Source of the DNA: Octopus sinensis
Taxonomy: Eukaryota
Direction of reading: 5' to 3'
Length of the DNA: 64,000 bases
Assembly (NCBI RefSeq): GCF_006345805.1
Contig: NC_042999.1
Coordinates: forward strand, 169,632,001 to 169,696,000
A program made the translations under genes and the position numbers. Each line of letters opens with the position of its first letter. Position 1 is the stretch's first letter. Shown piece after piece: positions 6,674 to 47,502 of this stretch. The notes under the pieces were generated by a model, which ran no database searches, was not told where the DNA came from, and saw only the letters and a program-made list of their open reading frames with translations.

Positions 6674-7447
6674 GATGATGATGATGATGATCATCATCAT
6701 CGTTTAACGTCCGTTTTCCGCGCTAGCACGGGTTGGATGGTTCGACCGGGGTCTGGGAAGCCAGGGGCTGCACCAGGCTCCAGTCTGATCTGGCAGAGTT
6801 TCTACAGCTGGATGCCCTTCCTAATGCCAACCACTCTGCAAGTGTAGTGGGTGCTTCTACATGCCACCTGCACAGGTGCCAGGGAGGTCCGGCATCGGCC
6901 ACGATCGGTTGGAGCTTTTAACGTGCCACCGGCACGGAAGCCAGCCAAGGCGGCGCTGGCAACGGCCACGTTCAGATGGTGCTTTTTATGTGCCACCGGC
7001 ACAGAAGCCAGTCGGGGCGGCGCTGGCATCGGCCACGTTCGGATAGTGCTTTTTATGTGCCATCGGCACAGGTATCACAACTACTATTTCCATTGATATT
7101 TATTTCGATGTTCATGTACTTGACTCAACAGGTCTCCTCAAGCACAGCGGGACGTTCTGGAATCCAGGGTACTTTGAATGGGCAGGGGCTATGCAGAACT
7201 GGTACAGGAAGCAGCCTGGATCTTTGCAGTGACAGCATATCTCCAGAGATCTCAGTCCTTCGCCATTGCCTCAGTGAGGCCCAACGCTCTGAGGTCATGC
7301 TTGACTACCTCATCCCATGTCTTCCTGGGTCTACCTCTCCCCCTGATACCTTCAACTGTTTGGGAGTGGCACTTCTTCACACATCTCTCCTCATCCATCC
7401 GCAGCACATGACCATACCATCGCAAGCGTTGCTCTTGCACACCACAT
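6674..7447 (-). mobile_element. 5'-truncated RTE LINE (RT C-terminus, 3' UTR, (ATG)n tail)
   Basis: RRLRWYGHVLRMDEERCVKK...RGRGRPRKTW; near-identical to 21569-22320; CGGACGTTAAACGATGATG tail. Confidence 0.93.
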
Positions 7448-7560
7448 AAAATAAAAGGCAAAAGTTTCAAATAGCTCAGTGGTTTCCTTAATTCCATCGT
7501 TACATAACTAATATATTTAGATTATGAACCATTTGTGAAATTTATGCTTTACAGCGGGGC

Positions 7561-12307: not shown

Positions 12308-12400
12308 TCATTGATCAAAACACTTCAGAATTGTTTCAGTCTCTCTTAATCCACTCCAATAAGCACCAGCCAGTGACTGTGGAAACTGCCGGCAGGTGGC
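12308..12400 (-). CDS. KDM1B: KDM1B terminal coding exon (ATCRQFPQSLAGAYWSGLRETETILKCFDQ*)
   Basis: tttcag|GCC ... TGA (plus tca 12308-12310); matches human ATNRHFPQTVTGAYLSGVREA. Minus-strand AATAAA candidates at 11998-12003 and 11372-11377. Confidence 0.96.
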   Translation of the reverse strand, partial: ATCRQFPQSLAGAYWSGLRETETILKCFDQ

Positions 12401-15400
12401 CTGAAATAGATTTTCAAATAATTAGCAACCACTTATAAAAGGAAATAACTCGATAATTTGATACCTACAAAGCTAAGACTGCCCCATCAGTTCTATGCTA
12501 TAAAATTGTTTGTTTCCAGGTGTCCATATTTAAATTGAAACTTTGGTCCATAATTATTCATGAAAGACTATTTATAAAGGAAGTAACAATGATTTAAATC
12601 TTTAGACAGCAACCAATCTAAGACTGTTCATCCAGTTCTATGAGATAAAATTGTTCATTTTTAAATATCCATATGGAAACCTTGGATCATAATTCTACAT
12701 GAAAAGCATTTCTGAGAAAACCAGTATGCCAAATTTAACCATATTTTCATTATTTTAAAAATTAATTCAAACACATAGGTAATGTGTTTCAATAGAAATA
12801 GCATCATAAAGATACTGGATTATGATAGACACTAACTGGTATAGCTGCCTGCCCCCCTGGTATGAACAAAGGGTCAGAAATAGGTGCCTTGCAGTAAAGG
12901 AGAGAGAGGTGGGGGAGATGTTGAAGATGTAAAGAATGGGTCCATTCAAGTTACAGAGAAATGCATATAAGTGGAGCCACGGATTGGATAGGGTGAGTGG
13001 ATGGGTTGAGTTTGTGAGATTACGAAAGCGAAGTGGGAGATGGGAAAGCAGGGAGAAACTAATTGTGACTGCACAACACAAAACCGTCCATTCTATAAAG
13101 TGTTCATATTTATATTAAAGTAAGAGTAACATCCAGAAGTCAAAGAAAGTGATTAAGGCCTGCATCGTCAAGAAAAACAAAAATTAAATTTACAGGAGAG
13201 TTTGTTGTATTTAATTACTTCAAAGCACCAATATTCCACACTCCATCTAAGGGCCTGTAACTTAAAAATGCTATTCCCTTATCCCTGGTCCCCACTCCTT
13301 CACCCAATAACTGAACTTATTACTGCAATAATCTTGCCTTTTTTATTTAAATTAAAACCTTCTGTCATAATTTTAGAAAGAAGCTTCTGTTAAATTCTGT
13401 CCCAAGCAACAAAAAAATATAGAAAATGTTACTTTACTTTATCTTCCAAATTCTTGATTATTTTAAAAACTAATCGAAACACACACACAGGCAGTATATT
13501 TCATTGAAAATAGGATCATGATAGGGTTAAACTAGGCAAATATCTTTTAAAAAAACAAGGTTATCACAACATGAAAATGTAGTACTTACTTCTCCAGCAA
13601 AAAAAATCTTGTCATGGAGCTGTTGTGCAATGTGTGTGTAAACAGAAGCGTCTACACCAACCGGGACATAACTGTAAGACATACGATTGGAACTTTCTTT
13701 CTGCCAGTGACTTGTGTAATACTGCTCAGGTTCTGGGATTTTCTGCAGTCAAAACAAGAATATTTGAAAAGACTTTCTTCTGATAAAATATTGAACTTTG
13801 CCCAGGCTATTCTTATTCTAGCAGCTACACTTTCAGAGCATCCACCCCCACTACTGACTTGGTCACATAGGTAACAGAAGCTATCAATTACTTGTAGTTT
13901 TTTCCCCTGGAATGTGACGGAGGCTGTTTTCTGCACATTTTCAGTGTTTATTGCTCCTGAGCATTTGACACACACAAAAACTATCTTCCTAGTTAGCCTT
14001 CTTTTGATATTGCTGCACCTCTTATGTGTCCATGGCTTACACTGGGAACATCTTATGGAGTTTCTACCTATGCCTTTGCTACAGATTGAGCAGGGCCATC
14101 TACCTGAAGGGACTTATCGTTTGTCTACCTTCCTACTTATTAAGACTTTGGTTTTAGCTAAGTTGACTCTAAGGCCCTTCGATTCTAATACTTGCTTCCT
14201 TACCTGAAACTTCTCCAGTTCTGATAGTGACACAGCAATTAGAGCAAGGTCATCAGCATAGAGGAGCTCCCAGGGATATCCTGTCTTGAATTCCTCTGTT
14301 ATTGCCTGGAGGACTATGATAAATAGGAGGGGTCTGAGGACTGATCCTTGGTGGACCCCTACCTGGAATTCTTAACTGTACTCATTGCCAACCCTCATCT
14401 TACTGACAGCATCCCTGTACATGGCTTGTACAGCTCTCGCTAACCATTCATCTATCCCTAGTTTCCGCATTGACCACCAGACAAGGGATTGGGGTACTCT
14501 GTCAAAAGCTTTCTCCATGTCAACGAAGGTTAGGAACAGAGGCTTATCTCTGGCTAGGTATTTCTCCTGCAGCTGTCTTACCAGAAATTGACTATACGGG
14601 TGACTAGATTACAGCTGACACTGCCAGATATTTCAAGCATCTCTGCAGTGATTCCTGATGTGCCGGGGGCTTACCCTGTCTTCATACTCTTAATTGCTTT
14701 ATCTATCAAGGTACTGTCAATTCAGATAGCTGGTCCCTCTATTGGGTCGACATTTGGCAGACTCTCTTTCTCCCATTCATTCTCTTAATTTAGCAACCTT
14801 TCATAGTGGCATCTCCAAACCTCTCTCTTTGCAGCCTCATTTAGCGCAAGTGAACCGTCATCCTTGCGAACACATTTCTCTCCTACCACGTCACGATTCT
14901 CTCTCACACACTGTCTTGCAACACGAAATACCTCAAGTCTTTCATCCTCACAGCACAGAACATTGGCAAATTTTTTCTTATCTGCTTCCCCTCTGGCTAA
15001 ATATACCTGTCTCCTAGCTTCCCTTCTGGCAGTCTGATACACTTCCCTGCTCCCACCGTTCTTCCAGTCCTTCCAAGCTTGTTTCTTTTGTCTAATAGCC
15101 CTGTCAACAATATTGTTCCACCACCACGTTATTTTGGGTCTTGAGGGGACTTTGCACCAGCCACAGATCTGGACAGTGGCTCTCAGCAGGTTGTCCCGTA
15201 GAAACCTCCAGTTGTCTTCCACATTATCTGATGCTATATCTCCCTCTATTTCATCTAAGGCTTCGAGTAATACGTCTCTAAATCTCTGTCCATTTGCAGG
15301 ATCCTTAAGCTTCTAGACCCTTCTTCTCCATATTGGTCGTCTTCTGGGCATCCATTTAGCCCTGATCTTGAAGTTGCTAACTACTAATCTATGTTGTGGG

Positions 15401-16544
15401 GTGCATTCTTCACCTGGAAAAGTTTTGGCACTTATAAGTAGCCATCTTTTCTGTTTCCTGGTGAAGGTGTAGTCAATTTGACTAGTGTGTCTACTAAATC
15501 AGCAGGTGAATAGGTGGCTGGCAGGTTTCCTGAAGTTAGTATTAAAAAACATAAGATCATTTGCATCGCAGAACTTCAGCAGCCTGGTTCCTTCCTCAAT
15601 GTGGGAACGAAAACCATAACCTCCTTAAATCACATCTTGCCATCTTAAAAGCATCTCTACATACTTTGTCTTTCTGAATGCCTTTGATAATAGGTTGGCT
15701 GCTCTATGAACAGAGGACAGGGCTAAACAAAGATTACCTCCTTTACATTAAGTAACAAGAGGTCCACCACTGCAAGCAGTTAGATAGACCAATCCAGTCA
15801 GTGACATACAGGAAGGACTCTTCAGTTTTGATGGAGGAAACCGCTCCGATAGCGGTGGCATTAAATGCACTCAGTGCATGCTGTAAAGTAGTTGGTGATA
15901 GCAAGGACACCGAGGTGTAAAAACAAAAAACAAACAAAAAAAAACTATAGCAAAAGTATGACATGAATAACAAGAACAATTATGTTTCTCCATGTATCCT
16001 ATGAAAAAGGACCATGATGAATGAAAGACACTTTCAACTCATGCTGGGGTGGAAAAGTAAACATAAATTTTGAGATATGTGTATAAATCATTGTCATTTT
16101 CATGTTCACATAGGTTGATTAGAATTTGCTGAGACAGATTTTTCTATGGCAGAATGCCTCTCTGACACTAATCTTCATCTTTTGATAAGTGACATATTTC
16201 CCCATGACCAGAAATATTTTTTACAGAAGACTTCTCACTGAATTCTTGTTAATTGATTAATGGATAAATCATATCATTATATAAAAAAAAAAACATCTTC
16301 AGATGAGTACACAAACCACAATATTAGGAACATTTAACAATTTTCCAAAGTCCATGGCAAGTGCGTATTTAGTGATTTCACAACCTTCATTGTGCATTTC
16401 TGGATTCACCCCAGAGCTAGTAATAAACTCAGTAGAGTTCAATTAATTGTATACATAACCTGAATATCTTTCTGCCTGTATTTGGTACCAATGTTTGTAT
16501 TTGCCTATAGTTGCTGTGTATGCATTTTCATTTTAACCTGACCT

Positions 16545-16580
<36 letters not shown>

Positions 16581-19500
16581 AGGAGTCTTTTACGATAACA
16601 TGGTGGACCAGGTCAGTTTGAGCTTCCCTACTACTAAAATGTAAACTTTTTTGAACTTATAATATTCTGTTTTTTGTATGTATATACAGATACAATACCA
16701 ATATTCCACTGAACTTTTTAATAATTCTTTCTGGAAACTGTCTTTAACATTTTCTTGAGAATGTATATATACATTGTAATCTTTTGTGCCCAATATTTTA
16801 ATGAACTTGTTAAACTTTTTTATGTTCTTAACATGTTCTTGTTTCCAAAGACCGTATATATGTATTGTAGCATTTTGTGACAACCAATAATTAACACAAC
16901 CAAACTTTTACATGTTACTTTTGACAATATTTTTCTAAAAAGTGAAACCGGTAAAGTAAATAAACATCTTTTAAAATTGCATTTTCAAACCTTCTTTCAT
17001 ATATTAAAGCATTTTTTTTCTAGTTTTCATCTACCAAATCCACTTATAAGACTTTGGTTAGTCTGGAGTTATAGAAGACATTTGCCCAAGATGTCACATG
17101 GAAGGGTTGACTCTGGAACCATGCTGGGAGGAGTAAACATACACATACATGTATATTAAACTTAATTTAAATATAAATACTAACCTGTTCTGGGAACAGC
17201 TTACTCAAGACATCCATACACGCTTGTACAATTTCTTCACTTGATTTACCCATCACTTTTTTCAGACCATTCCCAGCAATATAGGTCACTAAAACGTGAG
17301 TCTCTTTGCCAGATTTCTGACAAGGGACAGAATAGGAAGTAAAAAAGTACAATTAATACAAGAAATTGCATGTGTGTGTGTGTGTGTGTCAGTGTGTATG
17401 TATGTATCATCATCATCATCATCATCGTTTAACGTCCGCTTTCCATGCTAGCATGAGTTGGACGGTTCAACTGGGGTCTGGCAAGCCCGAAGGCTGCACC
17501 AGGCCAGTCAGATCTGGCAGTGTTTCTACAGCTGGATGCCCTTCCTAACGTCAACCACTCCGTGAGTGTATGTTTAAAGTAAAATGCAAAGTAAAATATT
17601 TATCCAGACTCAATATTGAAAATAATGAAATGCTTAACAATGCAAAAACAAGATTTAAATAAAAATGTCTCCAAGGTCTAAAATTATGGAAAATGATGGA
17701 TATATAAAAAAAGATTAAAAATTGACGTTGAACAATTTCTTGATTCTCACCTGGACTTTTGAGAGATCATAGAACACACTGAACAGCCCCCGGCAGCTTT
17801 CATCAGAGGCAATATAACCAAAGACATCAACATCTTTCACCTTCTCACGCCAAAAGTTCTTCTTGAACTGCAAAACAATCTGAACAACAACAACAGCAAC
17901 AGTTTAGAAACTTGGAAACATTTCAGCTAAAAATCTACAAACAACAAAAATAAACAATTGGATTCACCAATTTAGAACATTGTTAACAAAACTCTACTGT
18001 AAATCACACACACACTGCTTTGAGTCAAAGATCCAAAGAACTGCTGGTCACAGTCAACTGATATTTCCTCACACAGACAGACAGACATACAGACACACAG
18101 GCAGTAATCAGCTAAAGCATGAAAAAGACAAAACTAGTAGGTTATATTACCTCATTGCCCCATCCCCACCTCACAGCCCTCTGAGGGCTAACATCCCCTT
18201 CAACATACCCAGCACCACCTTGGGAGTGGTACCTCCCATGTTGAGAATCTCTGCTCTATGTGCTCACTCAGCCTTACAGAAATAGCAGCTATATCTCTGA
18301 CTGGGGTTAAATAATAACAACTTCAATGTTAATTCTCGTTTTCTTATAGATGTAAAGAAATACCACAAGGAATTTTGTTCATCCTTCAAAGGATTCTGCA
18401 CCCACCCACCTACTTTGCAAGAAACATTAAAAAGAATTCTAATTCTCAAGACTTACCATTTCAATAACACCAGCACCAAGCGACTTAATTGCTTTAGTTT
18501 TCTCTACTGGCAGATGAGGCACAAAATCAATAACATCTTTTTGTAACACAGATAAGGGAACTGTAACCAACACCTGGTAATGTAGAAAAAAAAAAACAAT
18601 TTACTTTACATACTAATGTTTCTGTGGTTGCGTTTTGTGTATCTAATTATGTTGCTTTATATAATAGAGAGAAAATGGGAAGCTATTAACAATGTAAAGT
18701 TGAAGGGAAAATAAATATTACAAGCCTGGCAAAAGTTAACCACTATATTTACTGATAGACCCTCCTATCACTACTTTGGCAGGTACAGTGAAATCTATTG
18801 ATTTGCTAATAAGTTTATAATAAGACTGAAACAAGTCAAGAGTTGTCAGTCATTGATTACATGTTTTCTTATATTCTCTCATTATAAATATTTCTAACTA
18901 GCTTTGTAATTTTCCTTGTATTAAATATGTCAATCTGATTCTAACTTCTTCTCATACAAAAGCATCTCTGAGTAATTTACTCTACATTACATGCTATAAT
19001 GTTTTTATAATTAATGTAGAGAATGAATAGCTTTGTGCTCCAGGTAACAAAACTCTAATCTGAACAGGTAGGAGTTCGAGTATTGTTTGTTAGTAACAAC
19101 CATTAATTACTAATTAAAGATGATACTTGAAGATGGCAAAGGTTGATGATGACCTTCAATGGACAATAACTAACTGTCATTATTGAAGCTGTTCCACAAA
19201 AAACAACAACTAAATGTTGACCATTTTATAGCTTTAAAAGTCAAAGATGTCTGGTGAATGGGTAAAAATTAAAAAAATTAAAAATTTTCAACTTTAAAAA
19301 AAAAACTTCTATTCTCAATTACAACCTAGTAAGGATGAAAAGCAAACTCGATAAGGAGTAGGATTTGAACTCAAAATGTAAAGCAACGTAACCAAATACT
19401 AATAAATACTAAAAGGCATTTTGGTATTTGTTCTATCAATTTTTCTAATCTACCACTTTAGCATTAACCAAACATATTTTGACATTTTAACCTATCATAA

Positions 19501-22500
19501 TTTGATCCCTCTCTCCAGAACATTAGGGTCCCAGCTGACTGCTTTGCCCAGTCAATTTAGATGAGTCTAATTATTGAAAGAGAGAGAGAGAGAGAGAGAA
19601 GGCAACATTAACTATTTGAAGTTGAGAATCAAAAGTGCTACAAATAACTGTAATTAAACATAAATAACGATTAAATAATTAGAAATGTTGACTCTAATTA
19701 ACTTAAAAAGCTAATAAGTCATAAAGTGTGATTGAACAGACCTTATTGGCTCGGAAAACAGCTCCAGATGATGCATGCACTATCACATCAGCTTCACTAT
19801 AGTCAATCTTTACAACCTGAAAGCCAAAGAGGTTTTAGTCAAAGTTAAGCAAATTTAATATTTGTATGAAGCCCCATTCCTACAAAACGTACATTCATAT
19901 TAAGTTTTACTGAGTGACCATTCCTATAAATGGTCACTAATGCTAATCAACTCTAAATCCTTATTTATGCTTATCTGCTAAATCCTTATTTACGTTGACC
20001 ACAAAGACATAACTTCAAACTTAGTTACTGTTTGCTTTTGTCTACTTAGCTGTAAAATAAGTATGATTTCCGCTTCATGAGGGAGGAGTTAGCTGTAGAA
20101 TGGGACAGATGCCCTCTTGGACCAGCAAGTCATCTATAAACATTTAAATTTACACAAGCCAACCCACTTGTTAGCATAACTTGTTCATCATTTTAATGTC
20201 TAATTTTCCATGCATGCATGGGTCGGATATGTATGTTGGAACAGGGTTTTCTTTGGCTGAATGACCTTGTTTCCAAGTGGGATAACAATCTTTCAGTCTA
20301 ACAAATAACAAGCAGCCTGGACATATTTAATGCCAAGGACTGGAAACAAATGACACTGTATGAATGAACCCTTTGCTTACAAAGAAATACAAGCCCATTC
20401 ACTCACACACACACACAATGGGGTTCTTTTAGTTCCTGTTTACCAAATTCTCTCACAGGGCTTTGGTTGACTTGGGGTTGTAGTAGAAAACATTTGACTA
20501 AGGTGCCAGACAGTGGGACTGAACTCAAAACCATATAGTTGTGAAGAAAACTTCTCAACCAAATAGCCATGCTGGTACCTATAAATTTAATAGGTGTTTC
20601 TAGCATAGGCATAAGGCCTGAAATTAGGAGAAAGGAATTTAGCTGGTATTATCAACCCCAGAACTTGACCAGGATGGAAGGTAAAGTTGCTCTCAGCAAA
20701 TCTATTTTGACTTTCATCCTTTCTGGTTATAATCAGAGAAAATATTTTGTTTTATTGGTTTACTTAATTTTTTATCTCTCCACAAGGCTTTGCTTAATAC
20801 TGGGGTAGAGTAGAAGCCACTCGCTCAAGGTACCACACAGAGGCACTGAACTCCAAACCACTTCTTACTCACACCATCACACCTGATCCCAGAAAAAGAA
20901 TTATTTCTAAAGAAAATATCCACAGACCTCAACATTATATTGAATATCTAAATCTTTAGAGAGAAGACATAATAGTTCTGATAGTCCTTGACATAACATT
21001 ATGCTGGAGCTGCCGAGCTGAGGAAAAGCTTCATGTTGATCCCAATGCATTGATGATAAATCTTCAACACTGCAACCACTGACCAACTCCATGTGACCCA
21101 GATAATACTCAAGGATCTTTTCTTCGTCCTAAAGTAAAAAAAAAAAAAAAATAATAGTCAAATAATAGCCAATGATAATTCCATAAACACAGTAACACAA
21201 AACATTTCATATTGATTTTGGAGCATTTAAATCATTAATTCCTTATTTCCTTTAAAAAAAGTTTGTCTAGTGAAAAACTTCACACAACAAAAGTCATCCT
21301 TAGCTTATTGTTTCTTTTATTTCTGATTCGAAGTCTTGACTAGAATACAAGAAAATAAAGAAACGGTTTTGAGAATTTAGATCAAATTGAGACAATGATC
21401 TTAAATGCTTTTTTTTTAATTGAATAAATCACCCTCAGGACTAATAGTCTAAAGCCTAGTACTTATTGCACTGGTCTCTTTGCCAAACTGCGAAGCTATG
21501 GGGATGTAAACACACCAACACTGGTCATCAAGCAGTGATGGGGGGACAAAGACACACACAAATATATATCATCATCATCATCGTTTAACGTCCGTTTTCC
21601 GCGCTAGCACGGGTTGGACGGTTCGACCGGGGTCTGGGAAGCCAGGGGCCGCTCCAGGCTCCAGTCTGATCTGGCAGAGTTTCTACGGCTGGATGCCCTT
21701 CCTAACGTCAACCACTCCGCGAGTGGAGTGGGTGCTTTTTACGTGCCACCTGCACAGGGGCCGGGGGGTCCGGCATCGGTCACGATCGGTTCGAGCTTTT
21801 AACGTGCCAGCGGCACGGGAGCCAGCCAAGGCGGCGCTGGCAACGTTCGGATGGTCTTACCGGCACAGAGTCCAGTCGGGGCAGCGCTGGCATCGGCCAC
21901 GTTCGGATAGTACTTTTTATGTGCCACCGGCACAGGCATCATAACTCCTATTTCCATTGATATTTATTTCGACGTTCATGTTCATGTACTTGACTCAACA
22001 GATCTCCTCAGGCACAGCAGGACTATCTGGGATCCGGGGTACTTTGAATGGGCAGGGGCTATGTGGAACTGATACAGGAAGCAGCCCGGGTCTTTGCAGT
22101 CACAGCATATCTCCAGAGATCTCGGTCCTTCGCCATTGCCTCAGTGAGGCCCAATGCTCTGAGGTCATGCTTGACTACCTCATCCCATGTCTTCCTGGAT
22201 CTACCTCTCCCCCTGATACCTTCAACTGTTTGGGAGTGGCACTTCTTCACACATCTCTCTTCATCCATCCGCAGCACATGACCATACCATCGCAAGCGTC
22301 GCTCTTGCACACCACATCTGATGCTTCTTATATCCAGCATTTCTCTCAGGATGCTTACACTCTGTCGTGCGTGCACACTGACACTACACATCCAGCGGAT
22401 CATGCTAGCTTCATTTCTTTCAAGTCTACGCATGTCCTCTGCAGTCACAGCCCATGTTTCATTACCGTGAAGCATGGCAGTTCGCACACATGCATCATAC

Positions 22501-24524
22501 AATCTACCTTTCGCTCTGAGGGAGAGACCCTTTGTCGCCAGTAGGGGTAGGAGCTTTCTGAACTTTGCCCAGGCTATTCGTATTCTAGTGGTGATACTCT
22601 CTGTGCATCCACCTCCGCTACTAACTTGGTCACCCAGGTAGCGGAAACTATCAACTACTTCTAGTTTCTCTCCCTGGAGTGTGATGGAATCTGTTTTCTG
22701 AGTGTCTGTTGTGTCTATTGCCCCTGTGCATCTGCCGCACATGAAAGCTATCTTATCTGTTAATTTCCCTTTAATGTTGCTGCACCTCTTATGCGTCCAT
22801 AGCTTACATTGGGTGCATCTTATGGAGTTTCTACCTGTACCTTTCCTACAGATTGAGCAGGGCCACCTACCCGAGAGGGTGTGTGCTGAGTACGCCTTGC
22901 TGCTTACTATTACTTTGGTTTTTTGCTACATTTACTCTAAGGCCCTTTGATTCTAACCCTTGCTTCCACACCCGAAATTTCTTTTCTAGTTCCGGTAGTG
23001 ATTCTGCTATGAGAGCTAGGTCATCAGCATAGAGGAGCTTCCAGGGGCATCCCGTTTTGAATTCCTCTGTTATTGCCTGGAGGACTATGATGAATAAAAG
23101 GGGACTGAGGGCTGAGCCCTGGTGCACACCTACTTCTACCTGGAATTCTTCACTATATTCGTTGCCAATCCTAACCTTGCTGACAGCCTCTCTGTATAGA
23201 GCCTGTACAGCCCTTATTAGCCATTCGTCAATCTCCAGTTTCCGCATCGACCACCAAATAAGGGAACGGGGAACCCTGTCAAAGGCTTTCTCCAAGTCCA
23301 CAAAAGCTATGTAGAGGGGTTTATCTTTAGCTAGGTACTTCTCCTGCAGTTGTCGGACCAGGAATATAGCATCAGTGGTGCTTCTACCTGGTACAAAACC
23401 GCATCTAAGCAAATTCTCTCCCTAATGAGATGGGTTATGACCCTCTCTGAGACCTTCATCACCTGGTCCAACAGTTTGATACCCCTGTAGTTATTTCTAT
23501 CTAGAGCATCACCCTTACCCTTGTAGCAGTTGACTATGGTGCTGCTGCGCCAGTCATTGGGTATGACTCCATTGTGAACTACCTGGTTTACAATGCGGGT
23601 GACTATGCCATAGCCCACATAACCAGCTGTTTTAAGCATCTCAGCAGTGATTCCTGATGGGCCGGGGGCTTTGCCTGGTTTCATATCCTTAATTGCCTTA
23701 TCTACAAGGGAGCTGTCTATTCGAGTAGCTGGTCCCTCTACTGGGTCAACATTTGGCAGGCTCTCTTCCTCCCATTCATTCTCCTCGTTCAGCAGTCTTT
23801 CATAATGGCTTCTCCAAGCCTCTTTCTTTTCACCAACATTAAAAGCAAGTGCCCCATCATCCATGCAGACACATTTCTCTCCTGTAACATCACTATTTTC
23901 TCTGACACACTGTCTGGCAATCCGAAATACCTCAGCTCTTTGGTCCTCATACACATATATATATATACATGCCAGGCTTCTTGCAGTTTCTGTCTACCAG
24001 ATCCACTCACAAGGCTTTGGTCAGCCCAAGGCCATAGTAGAAGATACGTGCCCAAGGTGCCATGCAGTGAGACTGAACTCGAAACCATGTGGTTGGGAAG
24101 CTAGCTTCTTACCACACAGCCACACCTAACCTAATAAAGTGACACAGATTAACTTGAATAAGAGTATCAATTACTTTGAGTAGAAAATATAAAAAAAACG
24201 ACAGGCAAAACTTGTTCAGTGGGAAAGCACCACTGGAAAGTGAGACTTAAGTTATTTCATCCAGGTTTAAATCAGAAAAAATATCCTAAAATATTTTTAT
24301 TTTTAAAAGGATTTGGTTCAAACTCTTTTACTTGTTTCAGTCATTTGACTGTGACCATGCTGGAGCACCGGCTTTAGTCAAGCAAATCGACCCCAGGACT
24401 TATTCTTTGGAAGCCTAGTACTTATTCTATCGGTCTCTTTTGCCGAACTGCTAAGTTACGGGGACGTAAACACACCAGCATCGGTTGTCAAGCAATGTTG
24501 GGGGGACAACAAAAAATAAACACG

Positions 24525-24563
<39 letters not shown>

Positions 24564-25697
24564 GACGAGCTTCTTTTCAGTTTCCGTCTACCAAATCCAC
24601 TCACAAGACTTTGATCAGGCTGAGGCTATAGTAGAAGACACCTGCCCAAGGTGGGACTGAGCACGGAATCATGTGGTTGACAAGCAAGCTACTTACCACA
24701 CAGCCACTCCTGCGCCTATATATAATTCTTTAAACAAATTTCAAAATTTTGTGTAATAAGACAACTGTGTGCCTGTATGTGTGCATAAACATGCACTCAC
24801 ACAAAATAGATTGAACAGCAGAGTTTCAAAATATTTCATCATAATGAGTATTCACAATAATTTCTATGGCCTGAGTTTCAGTTGTGTTTTACAATATGGG
24901 AAGAACATGAATGATTGGGACGAAAGGTTGAATGTTCACAGCTCCTTTAAAATATAGGAACTGAGAAGGATTGGTCATGTATGGTTAACATTTAAGGTTG
25001 GTACATGTAGGGCATTGTGGGGGTGCAATGGCCCAGTGGTTAGGGCAGTGGACTCGCGGTTTCGATTCCCAGACCGGGCGTTGTGTGTGTTTATTGAGCG
25101 AAAACATCTAAAGCTCCACGAGGCTCCGGCAGGGGGTGGTGGCGACCCCTGTTGTACTCTTCCGCCACAACTTTCTCTCACTCTCTCTTCCTGTTTCTTG
25201 AGTAATGCTGCAATGGACTGGCGTCCCGTCCAGCTGGGGGGAACACATATGCCACAGAAACCGGGAAACTGGGCCCATGAGCCTGGCTAGGCTTGAAAAC
25301 GGCGACATGTAGGGCATTGGATAAGGAATAAAGTCTTTTGCTGATATAAATACTTTTTCACTGTTCTCATTCTGTCAATGGTTAGGTGTTCAGGCAAGTA
25401 TACTGGCATTGATGTGGCAACATCTGAAATATTGTCTAGGTAAATGCAGCTGATGAAGACCGATCAAATTTACCTTGTCAAACGTATTTGAAGAATCAGA
25501 AACCGGTCCTGCATTATCCGATTCTGAGTTGTCCATTTATCAAATGTTCTTAGAGGCAAGACAAATTTTTCATGTTTGTTGCACACACACGTCTTTGCCA
25601 GTATATACGCAGTGAAGCTTTACAATAGCATTGTATTTGTATCGATTGCTATTTTCCAGTGAATATTGGTGCCTTGTTGTACCACTCTGATTTTATA

Positions 25698-25746
<49 letters not shown>

Positions 25747-25936
25747 TGGTAAAAACGGTAAGATAATAAAAGAAAGAAAGAGACCTCAATATTATGTAAA
25801 TAGAGGAAATTTTTTTTTTCATAGAGTTTTTCAGATGGCCAGATAACCGAAGAGATGGTGTTGTAGATTTCCACCTCAGCATCCGAAACTCAGAGGTTTA
25901 TCTTGGCTATTGAATAATTGTCACATATTATTTTAC

Positions 25937-25996
<60 letters not shown>

Positions 25997-28900
25997 TATA
26001 TATAAATATGAGATTTAAATTTCAGAAGTTGTGAGCAAATTAGCATATCTCAAACATTTAAGAAATATTACACTGTATTACAAAATTCAGCTTTGGGAAA
26101 CTGAGGATTGTATGTGTATGTGAAGAGTATAAATATGGTGAATGGTTAACTGACGTTATGTAAGGCACATCCCACCCTTGTTCAGTCTCCATGTTAAATA
26201 AAAATGGTTCAAATCCATAGAAAACCATTCGATATTCAACTATGGAATTTATTTGCTGTGTTATAAGAAGTACAAATTAAAGAATATGGTGACCAAGAAA
26301 CCTGACCCAATGCTGTAACTTTAGGTAAGTGATTACAATTTAAGTTAGTAGGTATTAGATGATGATTATAAAAATAAGTATTTTAATTAGGTGCAGGAGT
26401 GGCTGTGTGGTAAGTAGCTTGCTAACAAACCACATGGTTCCGGGTTCAGTCCCACTGCGTGGCATCTTGGGCAAGTGTCTTCTGCTATAGCCCCGGGCCG
26501 ACCAATACCTTGTGAGTGGATTTGGTAGACGGAAACTGAAAGAAGCCTGTCGTATATATGTATATATATGTGTGTGTGTGTGTGTCTGTGTTTGTCCCTC
26601 TAGCATTGCTTGACAACCGATGCTGGTGTGTTTACGTCCCCGTCACTTAGCGGTTCGGCAAAAGAGACCGATAGAATAAGTACTGGGCTTACAAAGAATA
26701 AGTCCCGGGGTCGATTTGCTCGACTAAAGGCGGTGCTCCAGCATGGCCGCATTCAAATGACTGAAACAAGTAAAAGAGTAAAAGAGTAATTCTAGATGAA
26801 AACAACTTGAGGATGACTTGGTACCAGCAAAGTAGAGACTAACAAGAAATTTATGTTTTATAAATTTTCTCATTTCTATTTTGATAAATACATTCATAAA
26901 TCTTCATAATAATGCTTTGTTATATTAAAGAATCTGATGACCTCTTCAGTTCCATTTCATAGTTAAAAAGATTGCTTAAAGCAAAACACATGAAATTATT
27001 TCATTAATGTTAAAGATTTCAATTATCTCTTCAATTTCATTCCATCTTTTATCTTTTGATTTAGTTATTGGACTGCAACCATCCTGAGGCATTGCCTTGA
27101 AGGGTTCAGTGGAATAATTCCACCCCAGTATTTACATTTTAAGTGTGGTACTTGTTACAGGGACGTTAACACCCCCACCCCCACCACCAGTTGTCAAGCA
27201 TGGGGTGGGGACAAACAAAAACAGAAAGACACATATATATATGTGTATATGATGGGCTTCCACATACCAAATTCACTCCCAAGGCATTGATCAGCCAAAG
27301 TAGAAGGCATTTATGCAAGGAGCTATGCAATGGAACTGAACTTGTAAGTACATGGTTGCAAAGCAAGGTTCTTAAAACCAAAGCCATGCCTGCACCAGGG
27401 TCAAATGGGTTCAACATTTGAAGGCAGAAACACGGAGACAAGCAGAAATATCAAAAGATATTTCTGATTTCAAAATTAGTTTTAAAGAATCTGAATATCT
27501 CACCAGAGAAAATTCTATTTGGGACTGCTCCAAAAATTGGTCATGGGCTTCTCGAAACTTGCCTGTAACAACACAAAACTACAGTAAAAGAAATATATAT
27601 ATGTGCGTTTATGTATAAATGTGCAACTTGTATAATTTTCATTTTAATAAAGAACCTAAAATAAAAGTATACGAAAGATGTAATATTTAGAAGGAACCCA
27701 AGAAATATCTGAGTATTGAATGATAGCATGTGATCTGTATTAGCTTTTAATTAATGGGGGGGGGGGAGAAAACAAAAAGACAATATGTCTGACACCTTTC
27801 TGAAACTAAAGAATAAGAATGTGGTTAATTTTCAGGTTGGATTGTGGCAGGGTTGGAAACTAAACAGAGAAGCAGTTCTTGGAAAAAATATCTGCCGAAA
27901 TGTTTGGTACAGGACTGAAAAATAATGTATATTAGGAAGGGCAGAAACAGGTGAGGTGAAGGAATTGCAGTTGTTTTAGGTTGTGTACAGAATCAGTAGG
28001 TTCAGAGAAACAGAAATGGTGCAGAAAGAGAGAGAGGATAGAGGTTGACAGGAACATTTTCCTTAGATCCTTTCAAGAATCTGAGAAAGAGAGAGAGAGA
28101 TACTGTATAGGAAATGTATCGGTACTGGTCATATTTTAACTAACTGCTGTTCAGGTTGGGAATATTTCCTGACCCTAAAGGGGAATAGGTTTTGTGATGC
28201 TGTCTTATGTAATATAAAAAGAAAAAAATGTGGAGTCACCGTAAAAGGTTAATGTCATCACTGTTGAAGAAAGAAAACAATAAAGTTACTTTAAAAATAC
28301 GTAAAACCAAAACAAATTCTGAACACAAAAATTTATTACTAAACTTAAATGGGTTTCTTTAATGGTTTGATCTGGAGAAAGGAACTGTAAGAGCTGTACC
28401 AACAGTCTTAATGGGATCTCTCTGATTGGTGAGATTGATAGAATTCATGTTCCTCTTGAATAATTACTGGAAAAAAAATGGGCAGGATGGGATTTCAAGG
28501 GCCTGTTGGGGAGAAAGGACTGGGTGATGTGGTTAGTGCAGTGATGGAAAGGACATAATATGAGTGATGAAAAGAAGAGAAAGAGGCAAATAAGTTAGGA
28601 GGGCCTAAGTGCATGTGGCATGACACCACCCAACTCTTGGGAACAGCAGCCACCATAGTAGCAGGCTTAAGGTAAGGTAACCTTCTTTGGAGATGGGCTT
28701 TTAGCACTCCATTATTGTAGTCCTCACTTAAGCTTTGTAGAGTAAGTAGTTAAGGAGGAAGAGGCTGTATTTTTAACCCCAGAAGAAAGATCAGTCCTTG
28801 TGATGTAGTCTTTGCTAAGTTGATGCTAAGAGAGCAGCAAGAGAGATCTTTATTGGTGGTGGTGGTGAGGCCTAAAACTTTTTTGAGTGAGGTGTAGTGA

Positions 28901-31900
28901 TTATATTTTTGTTTATTGTTGATGGAGAGAAGATTGATATGGCCTCATCGGAGAATGCTTTTGAGGGTTTTATGCACGGGGTCGGTATAGATATGACGTA
29001 TAGCACCGAGTTGACATGGAGATGACACTTGAACACAGACAGTTGGAGAGGAATGACAGGTCAAATCATCTGCAGTCAGCAGCACCGCAAGAGGAAATTT
29101 CAAATAGGTTGTTTATATAAAAGTGTGGAAGACTGAAATGAAACCATGGGGCAAACTATGGGTTGCAAAAGTATGGGTCAGAGAGAAGGCTTAATCATTA
29201 CATAACATCATGGTGTGATCTGACTGAAAGCACCCTAGCCAAGAGATAATGAAGCCTAGTCTAGCTAGGAGATTTGCATTCCAGACATGTCATGTAAATA
29301 CATATGTTCTTATTAAATTTTTCAAGAGTGAAGGTCCATTAGTGAGTGACACAGGAGAGCAGGTCTCCAGAAGATTATTGCTGTAGGTCTCCAGAAGTTA
29401 TTGATGGTCTTTGAAGAAGGAGAGGAATTTAAGGTGTTGGAGGTGTTCTTTTAATGACTGTCACCTTCCCATCAACTTTGAGATATTAGGAGTGCAAAAG
29501 ACCAGCAAATAGGAGGGTCCAAGGGATTTTCATTGAGATAGGAAGAAATTGAAAAGTTTTGTGAAGATAGGAGTTCACTCTGGGGCTAAGAACCAAATTA
29601 AACATAAGCTAAAGCATATAAATAAATTATGCAGACTATTTAACATGGGAAACACTTGTAACAAATGTACTTACTTAATAAGCCTGTATCTTTTGCCAAA
29701 GCATTATCTTTCCTCCATTCAGCAATAACATCGAGAATAGCATTAAAGTGGAAATTCAACCGGCGACAAGATTCTGGCAGTGCCAGCTGACCATTTTCAA
29801 AGATTAATTCATATTTGTCTCGAATAATTTTCATATCTATGTCTGCCTGAAAATAAAATATTCAAAATCTACACTTTCTCACTACTTATGAAAGGTTTTC
29901 GTTTTAAATATATTCTATGGTTAATCTTATCTGCAAGACGTTTTGTTAGCTTAGTAAATTTCTGGTTGAAACCCATGGCAAACAGAGAATACCAAATCAG
30001 AGTGGCTGGTGTTGATTAACAGCTTCTGCAGCAACAAGGAGGGCAGAGACACATTTTTCTCCAGAGAAGAGCCAAATCTATTTGCTGTCAGAATATTACT
30101 GCAGCTTATATTACTGATCACAAAAGAATGAAATGCTAAATTAAATACTAGATGTAAACCAGTAATCACCAAAGTTAAAAATATCAGCTCCCATACAGTA
30201 TGTTCAGATATTAAAAGTGCCTTTGATAGGATGGAAAGAGAAACCATATTTCCTCCAATACACATTTCTTAAAGTTTCCATATTTGTCATACTAATATAG
30301 GCTGAAACTGAAATAGCTATGATATTCAACCACAAACTTATAGTTTCATGTGTGCATATGTGTAGAATGGGTTGCATTATAGTGCAATTGGGCAGTGTCA
30401 TAATTCTACATATCTCAATTTTCAAACCTGTTGGATTATCTGGAATTGTTGCCTGTAACAGATTAGCATTATATCTGTAGAAGATATATTTTTTCCATAT
30501 GTTTAATGTCAAAAGACCAGCACTATGTTCTAACCCTAATGTCATAAGGCCTGAATCAAACCAACCATAATCCCACAAAACCAGCATTAAACTCTAATTC
30601 TTGATGCCATGAAACCAAAGTTAAGCTAAAACCTTTAAAATCTACTCACACTTTAGAAAACTTTTATATTATGATAACAAGGGTTGGAATTTAGAATCTA
30701 TTTGCTTGCAGGAACTGTTTGAAGCAGTGTTTTACAGATAGCTGCCCCTTCTTATTATCTATAGGAAAATGAGAGTGATAAATATCTAACAAAATAATCA
30801 AAGCAAAAACACATGTGTCATAGCTAAGGGAACAATAGAATGATTGAACCAAGGTTTAACATTTCATTTATAAATAAAAAGTTAACGTGTCATCCATGAA
30901 ACTAAAAAAAAAAAAATGCTAAAAATGATAACCACATATACTAATGCAACTGGACTGGCGAGATGGTAATTGCTTTTTCCCTGTTGATCAAAGCCACAAA
31001 CTCACCTGCATGCACATCAAACAAATTGGGTTATTAACACAGTTGTTGATTATTTGAGTTCCTTGGCCCAAACACATATCTCCAATATTACTTGCTTCAT
31101 CAACCCTGCCTCCTAAACAGTTCTGAGCCTCCAATACAGTCACCTGATCAGTAAAAAGAAAAATATTAATCAGAAAATAGAAATAAGATATAAATTAATA
31201 TAAAGTCTTAAGTGATATCAAAAATACAACAATTTATTTGCAAGAATTTACAGTCATTGGTTTCAAGTTTATATAATTCAGATAATAATGTAAGTCACTT
31301 CATAGTGTAAACATTTGAAAAAGGTGAAGATCTACGTTGATAAGATACAGCTGCTTGAGGCTACAATTAAAGGATATTTATAAACAACTTATAAAAGTCT
31401 TATAAAAATATGAATTGAATGAAAGAAAATCCAGACAGTAGAGAAATCTATCATCAACACTCATTGTTATAATGTTTACAGGCAGTTATCACAATGTATG
31501 TCATAAATTTCAAATGTCTTACCATTTCTCATGAAGTCTTTTAATTTCATCTTAATTCTTAGATAAACTTAACACTTTTACAACCACAGTTTTGCTGAAA
31601 TACACTATGTGCTTTTATTAATTTTGAAATTAATCACCAATTTCAAGGAATATAGTAAAAAATAACTTCTACATTATTAAAGTTGGTGCTTGTTAGGATG
31701 ACCACCTCAGGACGCTAAACTTTTGGATGAAATGACAAAAGACCGAGACACCTGGTGCCTTGCTGTACTCAAGAAGACCCATCCGCCACTACAGAAATAT
31801 TCAGGCCAGATCCCCTTGGTGAAGAGGATTGGCCTGTAAGAGTACTGTGCTGGGGCCACATAAAAAGCACTTATACCAATGGTATATCAATGTGCTTATG

Positions 31901-33303
31901 CCACATTAAAAGCATCTAGCACACACTGTAAAATGGTTAGCATTAGGAAGGGACACCTAACCATAGAAACCAAGTGAAATCAGACTGGAACCTGATGCAG
32001 TTCTCCAGCTCTGGTCAAACTGTCCAATCCATGCTTGCATGGAAAATGGACGTTAAATGATGATGATGATGATGATTAGAACCTAGCTGAACAAAAGTTT
32101 CTTACACGAAATTATAATGCATGCCTTAAAATGAAGCTTTATAGCATAGGATGAGAGGCAGTCTCATAACAGTTTAAAGATCTTTAAAGGGTTCCATCAA
32201 TATCCAGGCTTTCAAAAACTCTATGTCAGCAAAAAAAAAAAAAAAAAAAAGGGTCAATCTGTTTCTCTCTGAATCCTGTGCAACTACTGTCACACACACA
32301 CTGTCTGTCTGTCTGTCACATAGGCGCACACACACACACACACATTCTAAGGTTGTTCATCATTTATAACAATCAGACCAAATTACATATTTTAAAGGCT
32401 GTAATTTATTTCAGAGTCAATTATGTGAGACAACATTTCAAAGGTCAACTTGAAAATGCTCCCCAAATTGTCTTCTCCAGGCTTTCCTTGTTTATCCAGC
32501 CCATTTCTCCTACTTGGATCTGTCTTATCAACTCTTAGTCACCATCATCTTTCTTTACACAACCACGTATTTTTGCTATGTTCAGAGTTTAAAAAAAAAA
32601 TGAAACAAATAAAGTCCAGCGAAACAGTACATCTTTATGGCTGCTAAAAATGCTAGAAATAGCAACCAAATCTCCATCAAATAACACATTAAAAATAATG
32701 AAAGACAAATTAATCTAGTGTTATGCAAAAAAGAAAAAAAATGGGATGGGTTATTATCATCATCGTTTAACGTCCACTTTCCATGCTGGTCTGGGTTAGA
32801 CGGTTTGACTGAGAACTGGCAGCATCAGTCTGATTTGGCATGATTTCTACAGCTGGATGCCCTTCCTAACATCAGCCACTCCGAGAGTGTAGTGGGTGCT
32901 TTTTACGTGCCACTGGCATGGGAGCCAGTCAGGTGGCACTGGCATCAGCCACATTCAAATGGCACTTTTTACATGGGAATAACTAGAAAATCTTTAATTG
33001 AAGGTCTATTTAATCAGAGATGACCTGGAGCTAAACAACAATGGCTTTATGGGGAGTTGAATAGGAAGAATAACGAATGAATCTAATTTCTGTTCTACAT
33101 TAAGTGTTTTTGATTTGCTATGCTCCAGCATAGGCATAGTCCTATGACTGAAACCATTAAAATAGGCACAAGTGTGGGTGAGTGATTAAGAAGCTTGCTT
33201 CCCAATCAATGTGGTTTTTGGGTTCAGTCCCACTGCATGGCCCAGACTGACTAAAGCCTTATTAATGGATTTTGTAGATAGCAACTGAAAAAAGCCTATT
33301 GTG

Positions 33304-33364
<61 letters not shown>

Positions 33365-47467: not shown

Positions 47468-47502
<35 letters not shown>

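What the first reader, a model, noticed from the sequence alone, without database searches (positions are those of the whole stretch)
18457..18459. LSD2/KDM1B has Met in place of the catalytic Lys661: candidate pseudo-demethylase
Seen in sequence: exon 15 ends CTT GGT GCT GGT GTT ATT GAA ATG|gtaagt = LGAGVIEM, where human KDM1B has LGAGIIEK (Met644 of the 812-aa product). The rest of the 19-exon ORF is intact, with no stops or frameshifts. Established: this Lys (K661 in LSD1 and LSD2, K300 in maize polyamine oxidase) anchors the Lys-water-flavin N5 motif. K661A is the standard catalytic mutant, and K300M strongly impairs maize PAO. Inference: this lineage may keep LSD2 as a catalytically weak or dead chromatin reader/scaffold, or with changed chemistry. 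A-to-I editing cannot restore Lys, since ATG edits to GTG (Val). Caveats: AAG to ATG is a single base, and LSD1 K661A is reported to retain some nucleosomal activity.
Basis: partly seen in the sequence, partly recalled or inferred. Interest (0 to 1): 0.88.

Follow-up and report, generated by a model that had tools for sequence, protein, structure and literature searches.

The report
Cephalopod LSD2 lacks its catalytic lysine
The octopus version of the chromatin enzyme LSD2/KDM1B really does carry methionine where every other animal examined has the lysine next to the flavin, the change is shared by octopuses and cuttlefish-like cephalopods and is hundreds of millions of years old, and the gene is still tightly conserved, so it is a natural candidate for an LSD2 that works without, or with altered, demethylase chemistry.

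Summary
Confirmed. The window is the Octopus sinensis KDM1B/LSD2 gene on the minus strand. It has 19 GT-AG coding exons and encodes 812 aa identical to XP_029633555.1. Codon 644 (window 18459-18457) is ATG, the last codon of exon 15. It aligns to the Lys of SLGAGIIEK in solved human LSD2.

It is neither an assembly error nor a private variant. The codon is ATG in O. bimaculoides and in two decapodiform transcript contigs, one 99% identical to Sepia pharaonis KDM1B. The O. vulgaris protein has Met. Argonauta hians has ACG (Thr). All 112 non-cephalopod LSD2 orthologues have Lys.

The loss comes with coleoid-wide replacement of otherwise near-invariant substrate-pocket residues: N542H, L543M, Y545L, A546V, N562H, F568L, G570S/N. 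The FAD-binding motifs are kept, except that Argonauta has GGR changed to ETQ.

The amine-oxidase domain evolved faster than in most other molluscs in octopods (weakly in the one decapodiform tested). Within coleoids it is under strong purifying selection (dN/dS 0.03-0.11, and 0-0.04 in the remodelled pocket).

The best reading is a conserved LSD2 whose H3K4 oxidase chemistry is impaired or re-specified and whose pocket still matters. Activity is untested. Nautilus and octopus LSD1 could not be examined.

The parts
18457..18459 (-). Codon 644, ATG (Met), at the position of the flavin-N5 lysine (K661 of human LSD1 and LSD2). It is the last codon of exon 15 and is followed by the donor GTAAGT.
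   Evidence: PDB alignment; LSD1 to LSD2 to coleoid mapping.
18457..18573 (-). Coding exon 15 (117 nt): VLVTVPLSVLQKDVIDFVPHLPVEKTKAIKSLGAGVIEM.
   Evidence: Exact spliced reconstruction. It is the only copy in the window.
17751..17879 (-). Coding exon 16 (IVLQFKKNFW...). A phase-0 junction directly follows Met644.
   Evidence: The same phase-0 intron follows the AAG Lys codon in Ostrea edulis.
20928..21128 (-). Coding exon 13, encoding the remodelled substrate-pocket motifs. HMELVSG replaces NLEYACG, and WDQHEAFPQLGSSS replaces WDxNExFxQFxGxx.
31006..31143 (-). Coding exon 10, carrying the LEA....GGR FAD-binding motif. It is intact here and changed to ETQ in Argonauta.
34268..34342 (-). Coding exon 9, carrying the GxGxxG dinucleotide-binding motif (VVGAGITGL).
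12311..54109 (-). The whole coding span of the O. sinensis KDM1B/LSD2 gene, from the ATG at 54109 to the last codon at 12311, followed by TGA. There are 19 coding exons: 54109-54048, 49361-49218, 48305-48216, 47139-46914, 45308-45267, 42167-41996, 40440-40262, 35274-35095, 34342-34268, 31143-31006, 29846-29675, 27562-27504, 21128-20928, 19816-19742, 18573-18457, 17879-17751, 17316-17185, 13742-13590, 12400-12311.
   Evidence: the translation is identical to P0124. Pfam finds zf-CW, SWIRM and Amino_oxidase.

Best explanation
The gene is the single, expressed, selectively maintained LSD2/KDM1B orthologue of Octopus sinensis. In the common ancestor of octopods and decapodiforms, the lysine that holds the water bridged to flavin N5 was replaced by methionine through one transversion (AAG to ATG). 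In Argonauta it later changed to threonine (ATG to ACG).

On the same stem lineage, residues lining the H3-tail and flavin pocket were replaced. FAD-binding motifs, the Tyr lining the substrate lysine, the zinc fingers and the SWIRM domain were kept.

Inferred mechanism: the protein still folds as LSD2 and probably still binds FAD (not in Argonauta, or more weakly). Its flavin-dependent H3K4me1/2 oxidase cycle is strongly slowed or lost. What selection now maintains is a non-oxidase role of the re-shaped pocket and of the N-terminal modules. That role could be binding of a histone tail or another partner, scaffolding, or the reported E3-ligase and zf-CW-dependent activities.

Shown: the substitution, its phylogenetic spread, the pocket remodelling, retention of the FAD motifs, the LSD2 fold, expression as mRNA, and purifying selection. 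Inferred: loss or weakening of catalysis, and the nature of the retained function.
For: The codon and gene model are exact.

Met644 aligns to the Lys of human LSD2 in solved structures and to LSD1 K661.

The codon is ATG in two Octopus genome sequences (this window and O. bimaculoides) and in two decapodiform transcript contigs. The O. vulgaris protein has Met. Argonauta has ACG in genomic DNA and Thr in both of its protein records.

The column is K in 112/112 other LSD2 orthologues. Across 132 representatives of the wider family at 50% clustering it is K in 125, R in 5, Q in 1 and S in 1.

One search found 18 ultra-conserved columns changed in all coleoids. Nine of them lie between Octopus residues 525 and 553. 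This stretch corresponds to LSD1 N535, L536, A539, N540, D555, F560 and G562, which is the substrate region listed in PMC10821146 and PMC5453194.

Argonauta replaced GGR by ETQ through point substitutions with no frameshift.

Tajima tests show acceleration of the amine-oxidase domain only, with chi2 up to 21 in Argonauta and none in the N-terminal half.

In the literature, K661-type mutations impair stabilisation and oxidation of reduced flavin and abolish activity on peptides (PMC9803847). Lys300 is strictly conserved in all polyamine oxidases (PMC7576179). LSD2 has demethylase-independent functions (PMC11118440, PMC11241480).

No coleoid-specific Lys or Arg gain occurs at any known cavity position. 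There is no second KDM1B-like protein from a cephalopod among the top 120 hits.
Against: Activity was not measured.

LSD1 K661A keeps about 20% activity on nucleosomes (PMC9803847). From my own knowledge, Lys-to-Met in mouse polyamine oxidase affects mainly re-oxidation. Met therefore need not mean a dead enzyme.

FAD motifs are intact in Octopus and the decapodiforms.

dN/dS of the amine-oxidase domain (0.03-0.11) is close to that of scallops that keep the Lys (0.056). The remodelled pocket is almost frozen within coleoids (0-0.04). That pattern is what one would also expect from a still-catalytic, re-tuned site, possibly using the two new histidines H525 and H545.

Enrichment of coleoid changes in the literature active-site list is only marginal: 4/11 against 12/98, one-sided Fisher p=0.055.
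Confidence: 0.6

Rival explanations
1. Compensated enzyme. Coleoid LSD2 is still an H3K4me1/2 demethylase of roughly normal efficiency. The pocket substitutions (for example His525 and His545, replacing N542 and N562) co-evolved to take over the role of the lysine.
For: FAD motifs and the Tyr lining the substrate lysine are conserved. Purifying selection on the amine-oxidase domain and the pocket is very strong. The pocket changes are fixed in all coleoids alongside K to M. K661A LSD1 retains about 20% nucleosome activity (PMC9803847).
Against: Met changed to Thr in Argonauta, so no particular side chain is required at the site. Argonauta also lost the GGR FAD motif. The Lys is invariant in 112 orthologues and in 125 of 132 family representatives. 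None of the new residues is Lys or Arg. Several replaced residues (equivalents of LSD1 N535, A539 and D555) are substrate-binding positions (PMC10821146, PMC9803847).
Confidence: 0.22
2. Changed chemistry or substrate. The protein remains a flavoenzyme but acts on a different amine substrate, or passes electrons to an acceptor other than O2, using a re-specified pocket.
For: FAD motifs are kept, the pocket is coherently remodelled, and it is then frozen by selection. In this enzyme family the Lys is linked to oxidation of the reduced flavin (PMC9803847).
Against: There is no direct evidence for any alternative substrate or acceptor. The loss of GGR in Argonauta argues that FAD itself is dispensable in at least one lineage. 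Zinc-finger, CW and SWIRM chromatin modules are unchanged.
Confidence: 0.13
3. Artefact, private polymorphism, or a gene on its way to becoming a pseudogene.
For: A single-base difference from AAG at the last codon of an exon could in principle be a sequencing or assembly error.
Against: The same non-Lys state is seen in genome-derived sequences of four species (three Octopus species and Argonauta), plus the annotated Sepia pharaonis fragment, plus two independent transcript assemblies. The 812-codon ORF is intact with canonical splice sites in three species. dN/dS is 0.03-0.09. KDM1B mRNA is reported in Octopus maya testis (PMC6341066).
Confidence: 0.01

Closest known systems
Human/vertebrate LSD2 (KDM1B, AOF1), e.g. 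PDB 4HSU, 4GUS, 4FWE
   Same: It has the same architecture: N-terminal zinc finger plus zf-CW, SWIRM, and an amine-oxidase domain without a Tower insert. Sequence identity is 43%. The predicted fold superposes with TM 0.92-0.93. The GxGxxG, LEA..GGR and FFAGE FAD motifs and the Tyr lining the substrate lysine are conserved. It is a one-to-one orthologue, and the intron after the Lys codon is shared with oyster.
   Different: K661 is Met. N542H, L543M, Y545L, A546V, C547S, N562H, F568L, G570S and H572S alter the substrate and flavin pocket.
Engineered Lys mutants of flavin amine oxidases (LSD1 K661A; maize PAO K300M)
   Same: The same position is affected, and in the maize case by the same substitution to Met. 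These mutants fold and bind FAD and substrate but are strongly impaired (PMC9803847; Polticelli 2005 and Fiorillo 2011, as cited in PMC7576179).
   Different: Those are laboratory point mutants in an otherwise wild-type pocket. Here the change is natural, ancient, fixed in a clade, and accompanied by many pocket substitutions.
KDM1B-like protein of the mite Tropilaelaps mercedesae (OQR75056.1, P0156)
   Same: It is another annotated LSD2-like protein (SWIRM plus amine oxidase) with a non-Lys residue (Gln) at this position, retained GxGxxG and GGR motifs, and a degraded pocket.
   Different: It is a single predicted protein and has not been verified. The hit to the octopus query covers only residues 246-806, so the N-terminal zinc-finger/CW part was not matched. 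Its pocket is much more decayed (WDHNE changed to YAQYA). The event is independent.
Demethylase-independent functions of LSD-family proteins (LSD1 scaffolding; S. pombe Lsd1/Lsd2; LSD2 E3 ligase)
   Same: These give precedent that LSD proteins carry essential roles that do not need amine oxidation (PMC9803847, PMC7226997, PMC11118440, PMC11241480).
   Different: In those cases the catalytic residues are still present in the natural protein.

Membership tests
LSD2/KDM1B orthologue group | N-terminal zinc finger plus CW-type zinc finger | tested here: met
   Pfam zf-CW matches residues 135-187 with E=4.7e-8. The Cys/His columns C50, C55, C62, C70, H81, H87, C89, C92, C139, C144 and C166 are nearly invariant and are present in Octopus.
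LSD2/KDM1B orthologue group | SWIRM domain followed by a contiguous amine-oxidase domain with no Tower insertion | tested here: met
   Pfam SWIRM matches 268-345 and Amino_oxidase matches 375-807 as one stretch. Foldseek gives TMt 0.92-0.93 to LSD2 against about 0.74 to LSD1.
LSD2/KDM1B orthologue group | Orthology: best hits are LSD2 of other animals, the gene is single-copy, and gene structure is shared | tested here: met
   All top hits are annotated KDM1B/LSD2, and only one cephalopod cluster per lineage appears. The gene has 19 coding exons in Octopus, Argonauta and Ostrea, and the phase-0 intron after the Lys/Met codon is shared with Ostrea.
Flavin amine oxidase (MAO/PAO/LSD) catalytic class | FAD-binding motifs: GxGxxG, acidic residue at the end of beta2, GGR, and C-terminal FxGE | tested here: met
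   G372/G374, E395, G401-G402-R403 and G781-E782 are conserved in Octopus and the decapodiforms. Argonauta has ETQ instead of GGR.
Flavin amine oxidase (MAO/PAO/LSD) catalytic class | Conserved Lys hydrogen-bonded through a water to flavin N5 (LSD1/LSD2 K661, maize PAO K300) | tested here: not met
   Met644 in three Octopus species and three decapodiform sequences, and Thr in Argonauta.
H3K4me1/2 demethylase (functional class) | Conserved H3-tail pocket residues (LSD1 N535, F538, A539, D555, D556, H564 and their LSD2 equivalents) | tested here: not met
   N542H, Y545L, A546V, N562H and H572S are changed in all coleoids. E563 and D560 are kept.
H3K4me1/2 demethylase (functional class) | Measured demethylase activity, with or without NPAC/GLYR1 | not testable with these tools
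   This needs recombinant protein and enzyme assays.
Pseudoenzyme (catalytically inactive homologue kept by selection) | Loss of a key catalytic residue together with evidence of purifying selection and expression | tested here: met
   K to M/T. dN/dS is 0.03-0.11. Transcript contigs L001 and L003 exist, and KDM1B mRNA is reported in O. maya testis (PMC6341066).
Pseudoenzyme (catalytically inactive homologue kept by selection) | Demonstrated absence of catalytic activity | not testable with these tools
LSD1 K661A keeps about 20% activity on nucleosomes (PMC9803847), so inactivity cannot be assumed.

The most novel reading that the evidence does not exclude
Before octopods and decapodiforms split (hundreds of millions of years ago), coleoid cephalopods converted LSD2 from an H3K4 oxidase into a flavin-containing but non-oxidising chromatin factor. 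Its re-specified pocket reads or holds a ligand, and that pocket is what selection now preserves. A parallel loss in a mite would suggest that the conserved core role of LSD2 in animals is demethylase-independent.
Probability: 0.35. Interest if true: 0.75.

Novelty: new variant of a known kind. Interest (0 to 1): 0.66.

Why it matters
K661 mutants are the standard tool for separating catalytic from scaffolding roles of LSD enzymes, and they are known to be leaky. Here nature has run the experiment. A whole, old animal clade keeps a tightly constrained LSD2 without that lysine and with a re-built pocket.

If the protein is inactive, cephalopods provide a clean system to define what LSD2 does apart from demethylation. 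They would also show that H3K4me1/2 removal in gene bodies is handled differently in these animals.

If the protein is active, it shows how a flavin amine oxidase can work without the lysine-water-N5 motif. Neither outcome is in the literature I could search. The cephalopod epigenetic-machinery survey PMC9476566 does not mention KDM1 or LSD in its main text.

Tried and rejected
1. Alternative splicing or a duplicated exon that could supply Lys. tblastn of octopus, human-type and oyster-type exon-15 peptides finds only the one exon. The donor is unambiguous, and the decapodiform cDNA contigs read ...EM|VVLQF directly.

2. A second KDM1B paralogue with Lys. No other cephalopod protein appears among the top 120 hits. 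A canonical copy should have scored like oyster, at about 670 bits.

3. A compensating Lys or Arg elsewhere in the cavity. Coleoid-specific K/R gains fall only at positions equivalent to LSD1 592, 672, 713, 714 and 758, or in loops, never at listed cavity residues. The tools return no 3-D coordinates, so distances could not be measured.

4. Finding Nautilus or further cephalopods. The unnamed Logan hits turned out to be bivalve-, echinoderm- or vertebrate-like. The higher-identity representatives were Tegillarca, Branchiostoma, Menidia and others. A second homologue search with a 221-aa fragment returned nothing at all, which I take to be a tool quirk.

5. Identifying the two SRA runs by literature search. 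No paper mentions them.

6. The primary LSD2 structure papers (PMC3567815, PMC3625064) are not held. Residue roles were taken from reviews instead.

7. The first MAFFT --add of LSD1 misaligned because of the Tower insert. It was redone with the Tower removed and checked against published LSD1/LSD2 residue pairs.

8. I ran no further search on octopus LSD1, because a human LSD1 query would probably fill the 120-row list with vertebrates.
Full report
**1. The observation**

The gene lies on the minus strand. Window 18457-18459 is CAT on the + strand, so it is ATG in the coding sense. The text there is CTT GGT GCT GGT GTT ATT GAA ATG followed by GTAAGT.

I rebuilt the gene by exact matching of a database protein to the window, requiring GT-AG (or GC-AG) splice junctions. 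This gave 19 coding exons, from 54109-54048 down to 12400-12311 followed by TGA. The CDS is 2436 nt. Its translation is identical, residue for residue, to P0124 (Octopus sinensis XP_029633555.1, KDM1B isoform X2, 812 aa).

Exon 15 is 18573-18457. Exon 16 begins at 17879 behind a pyrimidine tract and CAG. The junction therefore reads ...LGAGVIEM|IVLQFKKNFW, and the Met is residue 644.

No other copy of exon 15 exists in the window.

**2. Is it the catalytic lysine?**

phmmer against all PDB sequences aligns slgagviemivlqf to SLGAGIIEKIALQF of human LSD2 (4fwe and others, E=1e-211).

I also aligned human LSD1 with its Tower removed.

The alignment reproduces the published LSD1/LSD2 residue pairs T335/N440, V333/I438, F538/Y545 and A809/Q803 (PMC5453194). 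It places LSD1 K661 on the same column as the LSD2 Lys and octopus M644.

In that numbering the LSD2 residue is K661. One paper labels it K666.

**3. Is it real, and how widespread?**

The homologue search found only three cephalopod clusters. Their members are:
- O. vulgaris, O. sinensis and O. bimaculoides.
- Argonauta hians, with two records from two contigs.
- A decapodiform cluster containing Sepia (Acanthosepion) pharaonis KDM1B and several Logan assemblies.

From the DNA:
- O. sinensis has ATG and O. bimaculoides has ATG. The O. vulgaris protein has M.
- Logan contig SRR9970004_9581 has ATG. It is a 1.9-kb intron-less contig, so it is a transcript, and it is 99% identical to S. pharaonis.
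- Logan contig SRR27666067_4070 has ATG. It is a 3-kb transcript from a second decapodiform, 91% identical to the first.
- Argonauta has ACG (Thr).

All 112 near-full-length non-cephalopod orthologues have Lys. These include bivalves, gastropods, a chiton, amphioxus, echinoderms, a hemichordate, a priapulid and vertebrates.

In Ostrea the codon is AAG and is followed by the same phase-0 intron. In scallops it is AAA.

The simplest history is AAG to ATG before the octopod-decapodiform split, then ATG to ACG in the Argonauta lineage. Assembly error, private variant and RNA-level rescue are excluded. A-to-I editing of ATG gives GTG (Val), and of ACG gives GCG (Ala).

**4. What else changed?**

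Among 161 columns that are at least 97% identical in the 112 other animals, 18 are replaced in every coleoid with data. Octopus deviates at 23 of the 161 and Argonauta at 30. The most deviant non-cephalopod deviates at 12.

Nine of the 18 lie between Octopus residues 525 and 553:
- NLEYACG becomes HMELVSG.
- WDxNE becomes WDQHE.
- F..G becomes L..S/N.

Mapped onto LSD1, these are N535, L536, A539, N540, L547, D555, F560 and G562. Position F538/Y545 also becomes Leu.

PMC10821146 lists the inhibitor-contacting residues of the LSD1 substrate region as T335, N535, F538, A539, D555, D556, H564, L659, K661, W695 and P808. Six of these eleven positions differ in all coleoids: N535, F538, A539, D555, H564 and K661.

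The statistical enrichment is only marginal: 4 of 11 ultra-conserved literature sites against 12 of 98 others, one-sided Fisher p=0.055.

By contrast, several features are intact in Octopus and the decapodiforms:
- The FAD motifs G372/G374, E395, G401-G402-R403 and G781-E782.
- The Tyr equivalent to LSD1 Y761 and the Trp equivalent to W751.

Argonauta has replaced GGR by ETQ through several point substitutions without any frameshift. No coleoid-specific Lys or Arg appears at any listed cavity position.

**5. Selection**

Nei-Gojobori dN/dS within coleoids is low everywhere:

| Comparison | Whole gene | Amine-oxidase domain | dS |
|---|---|---|---|
| O. sinensis vs O. bimaculoides | 0.034 | 0.034 | 0.12 |
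| Octopus vs Argonauta | 0.090 | 0.107 | 1.1 |
| Two decapodiforms | 0.076 | 0.074 | 0.6 |

Octopus-decapodiform comparisons are saturated at synonymous sites.

As a control, two scallops that keep the Lys give 0.056 for the amine-oxidase domain. Oysters are saturated.

The remodelled pocket segment (residues 505-560) has dN/dS of 0 to 0.04 within coleoids.

Tajima relative-rate tests used three outgroups. The amine-oxidase domain of Octopus and Argonauta has accumulated significantly more unique changes than oyster, limpet, abalone or scallop. Chi-square is 3.3-10 for Octopus and 9-21 for Argonauta. Against mussel the excess is not significant for Octopus and modest for Argonauta (chi-square 4.2-5.9). 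The N-terminal half shows essentially no excess. In the decapodiform the excess is weak.

The picture is a burst of change confined to the catalytic domain, followed by tight conservation of the new state.

**6. Fold and domains**

Pfam finds zf-CW, SWIRM and one uninterrupted Amino_oxidase domain.

An AlphaFold2 model built with 55 sequences has mean pLDDT 83 and pTM 0.85. M644 sits in a confident strand (643-649). Confidence is low only at the N-terminus, at 406-418 and at 546-552. The last of these is the loop equivalent to the acidic H3R2-binding loop of LSD1.

Foldseek places the model on human LSD2 structures with TM 0.92-0.93, and on LSD1 at about 0.74.

**7. How unusual is this in the family?**

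An exhaustive HMMER search of 1.84 billion cluster representatives returned 150 best hits. Of the 146 new representatives examined, 132 could be aligned at the Lys column. That column is K in 125, R in 5 (short amine oxidases plus one 701-aa ENA protein of unknown source), S in 1 and Q in 1.

The Gln case is annotated as KDM1B-like from the mite Tropilaelaps mercedesae. It keeps GxGxxG and GGR but has a strongly degraded pocket. This is a possible independent parallel, based on one predicted protein.

**8. Interpretation**

Established knowledge:
- The Lys-water-N5 motif is a hallmark of this flavoenzyme family, and Lys300 is strictly conserved in all polyamine oxidases (PMC7576179).
- K661A-type mutations interfere with stabilisation and oxidation of the reduced flavin. 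They abolish activity on peptides but leave about 20% on nucleosomes, whereas the pocket mutant A539E leaves about 5% (PMC9803847).
- LSD2 has roles that do not need demethylation: E3 ligase activity towards OGT, and zf-CW-dependent repression (PMC11118440, PMC11241480).

Putting this together, the most likely reading (about 0.6) has three parts. Coleoid LSD2 is a well-folded, probably FAD-containing protein. Its H3K4 oxidase cycle is severely weakened or lost. Its re-shaped pocket and N-terminal modules carry the selected function.

The Met-to-Thr change and the loss of GGR in Argonauta fit a site that no longer does flavin chemistry.

The main rival (about 0.2) is that the pocket changes, including two new histidines, compensate and the enzyme still works. 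The strong constraint on the pocket is equally compatible with that. A changed substrate or electron acceptor is a further possibility (about 0.1). Artefact or pseudogenisation is excluded for practical purposes.

**9. Limits**

- No enzymology was done and no coordinates were available, so no distances to N5 could be measured.
- No Nautilus, Vampyroteuthis or named squid sequence was found, so the change is dated only as older than the octopod-decapodiform split.
- Octopus LSD1 and GLYR1 were not retrieved.
- The species behind the two SRA runs are inferred from similarity only.

**10. Novelty**

I found no mention of this substitution in searchable papers. [quoted passage not shown] The only octopus-KDM1B paper reports expression in testis.

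I class this as a new variant of a known kind: a natural, clade-wide LSD2 without the catalytic lysine.

Noticed in passing
window 36682-39444 (intron 7 of the gene): There is a 2.8-kb array of about 140 copies of a 20-nt G-rich unit (GGGAGGTGTGGTGTGAAGGG). GC rises to 0.57 and GC skew to about +0.8 on the + strand. The array creates spurious stop-free frames of about 1000 aa in all three minus frames.
   Followed up: partly
window 60311-61028: A 94-nt tandem repeat of 7.6 copies at 98% identity lies upstream of the main start codon, between the two alternative 5' exons.
   Followed up: no
window 22059-23954 and 13655-15312 (minus strand, introns 12 and 17): These introns contain reverse-transcriptase-like ORFs of non-LTR retrotransposon type, with related copies in both. 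A further fragment lies at about 7255-7521.
   Followed up: no
window about 57396-57420 and about 62036-62069 (minus strand): Two alternative 5' coding exons are present. MHTTNRLL(L) matches O. sinensis isoform X1 (P0121). MNEEFSSAMGL(L) matches the longer O. vulgaris record (P0123). Both would splice into the exon just upstream of the ATG at 54109.
   Followed up: partly
L002 23097-23234 (Argonauta hians exon 10): The FAD-binding GGR motif (GGA GGC AGG in Octopus) reads GAA ACA CAG (ETQ) in Argonauta. This is in frame and seen in both protein records. The lineage also has the fastest-evolving amine-oxidase domain.
   Followed up: partly
P0156 (OQR75056.1, Tropilaelaps mercedesae KDM1B-like, 875 aa): Among the LSD-like representatives, this is the only one outside cephalopods with a non-Lys residue (Gln) at the N5-lysine position. 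Its FAD motifs are retained and its pocket is decayed (NLEYA becomes LIETS, WDHNE becomes YAQYA).
   Followed up: partly
AF2 model of P0001, residues 406-418 and 546-552: The only internal segments with pLDDT below 50 are the loop after GGR and the loop equivalent to the acidic H3R2-binding loop of LSD1. Both are regions where coleoids diverge from other animals.
   Followed up: no
cluster of P0232 (Menidia menidia): At least 21 annotated 'LSD2-like' C-terminal fragments of 228-528 aa are spread over many contigs of the Atlantic silverside genome. This suggests amplification of a partial KDM1B copy.
   Followed up: no
L008 (Mizuhopecten yessoensis) compared with L006 (Ostrea edulis): The phase-0 intron directly after the Lys codon is present in Octopus, Argonauta and Ostrea but absent in the scallop, which has 18 coding exons rather than 19.
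   Followed up: no
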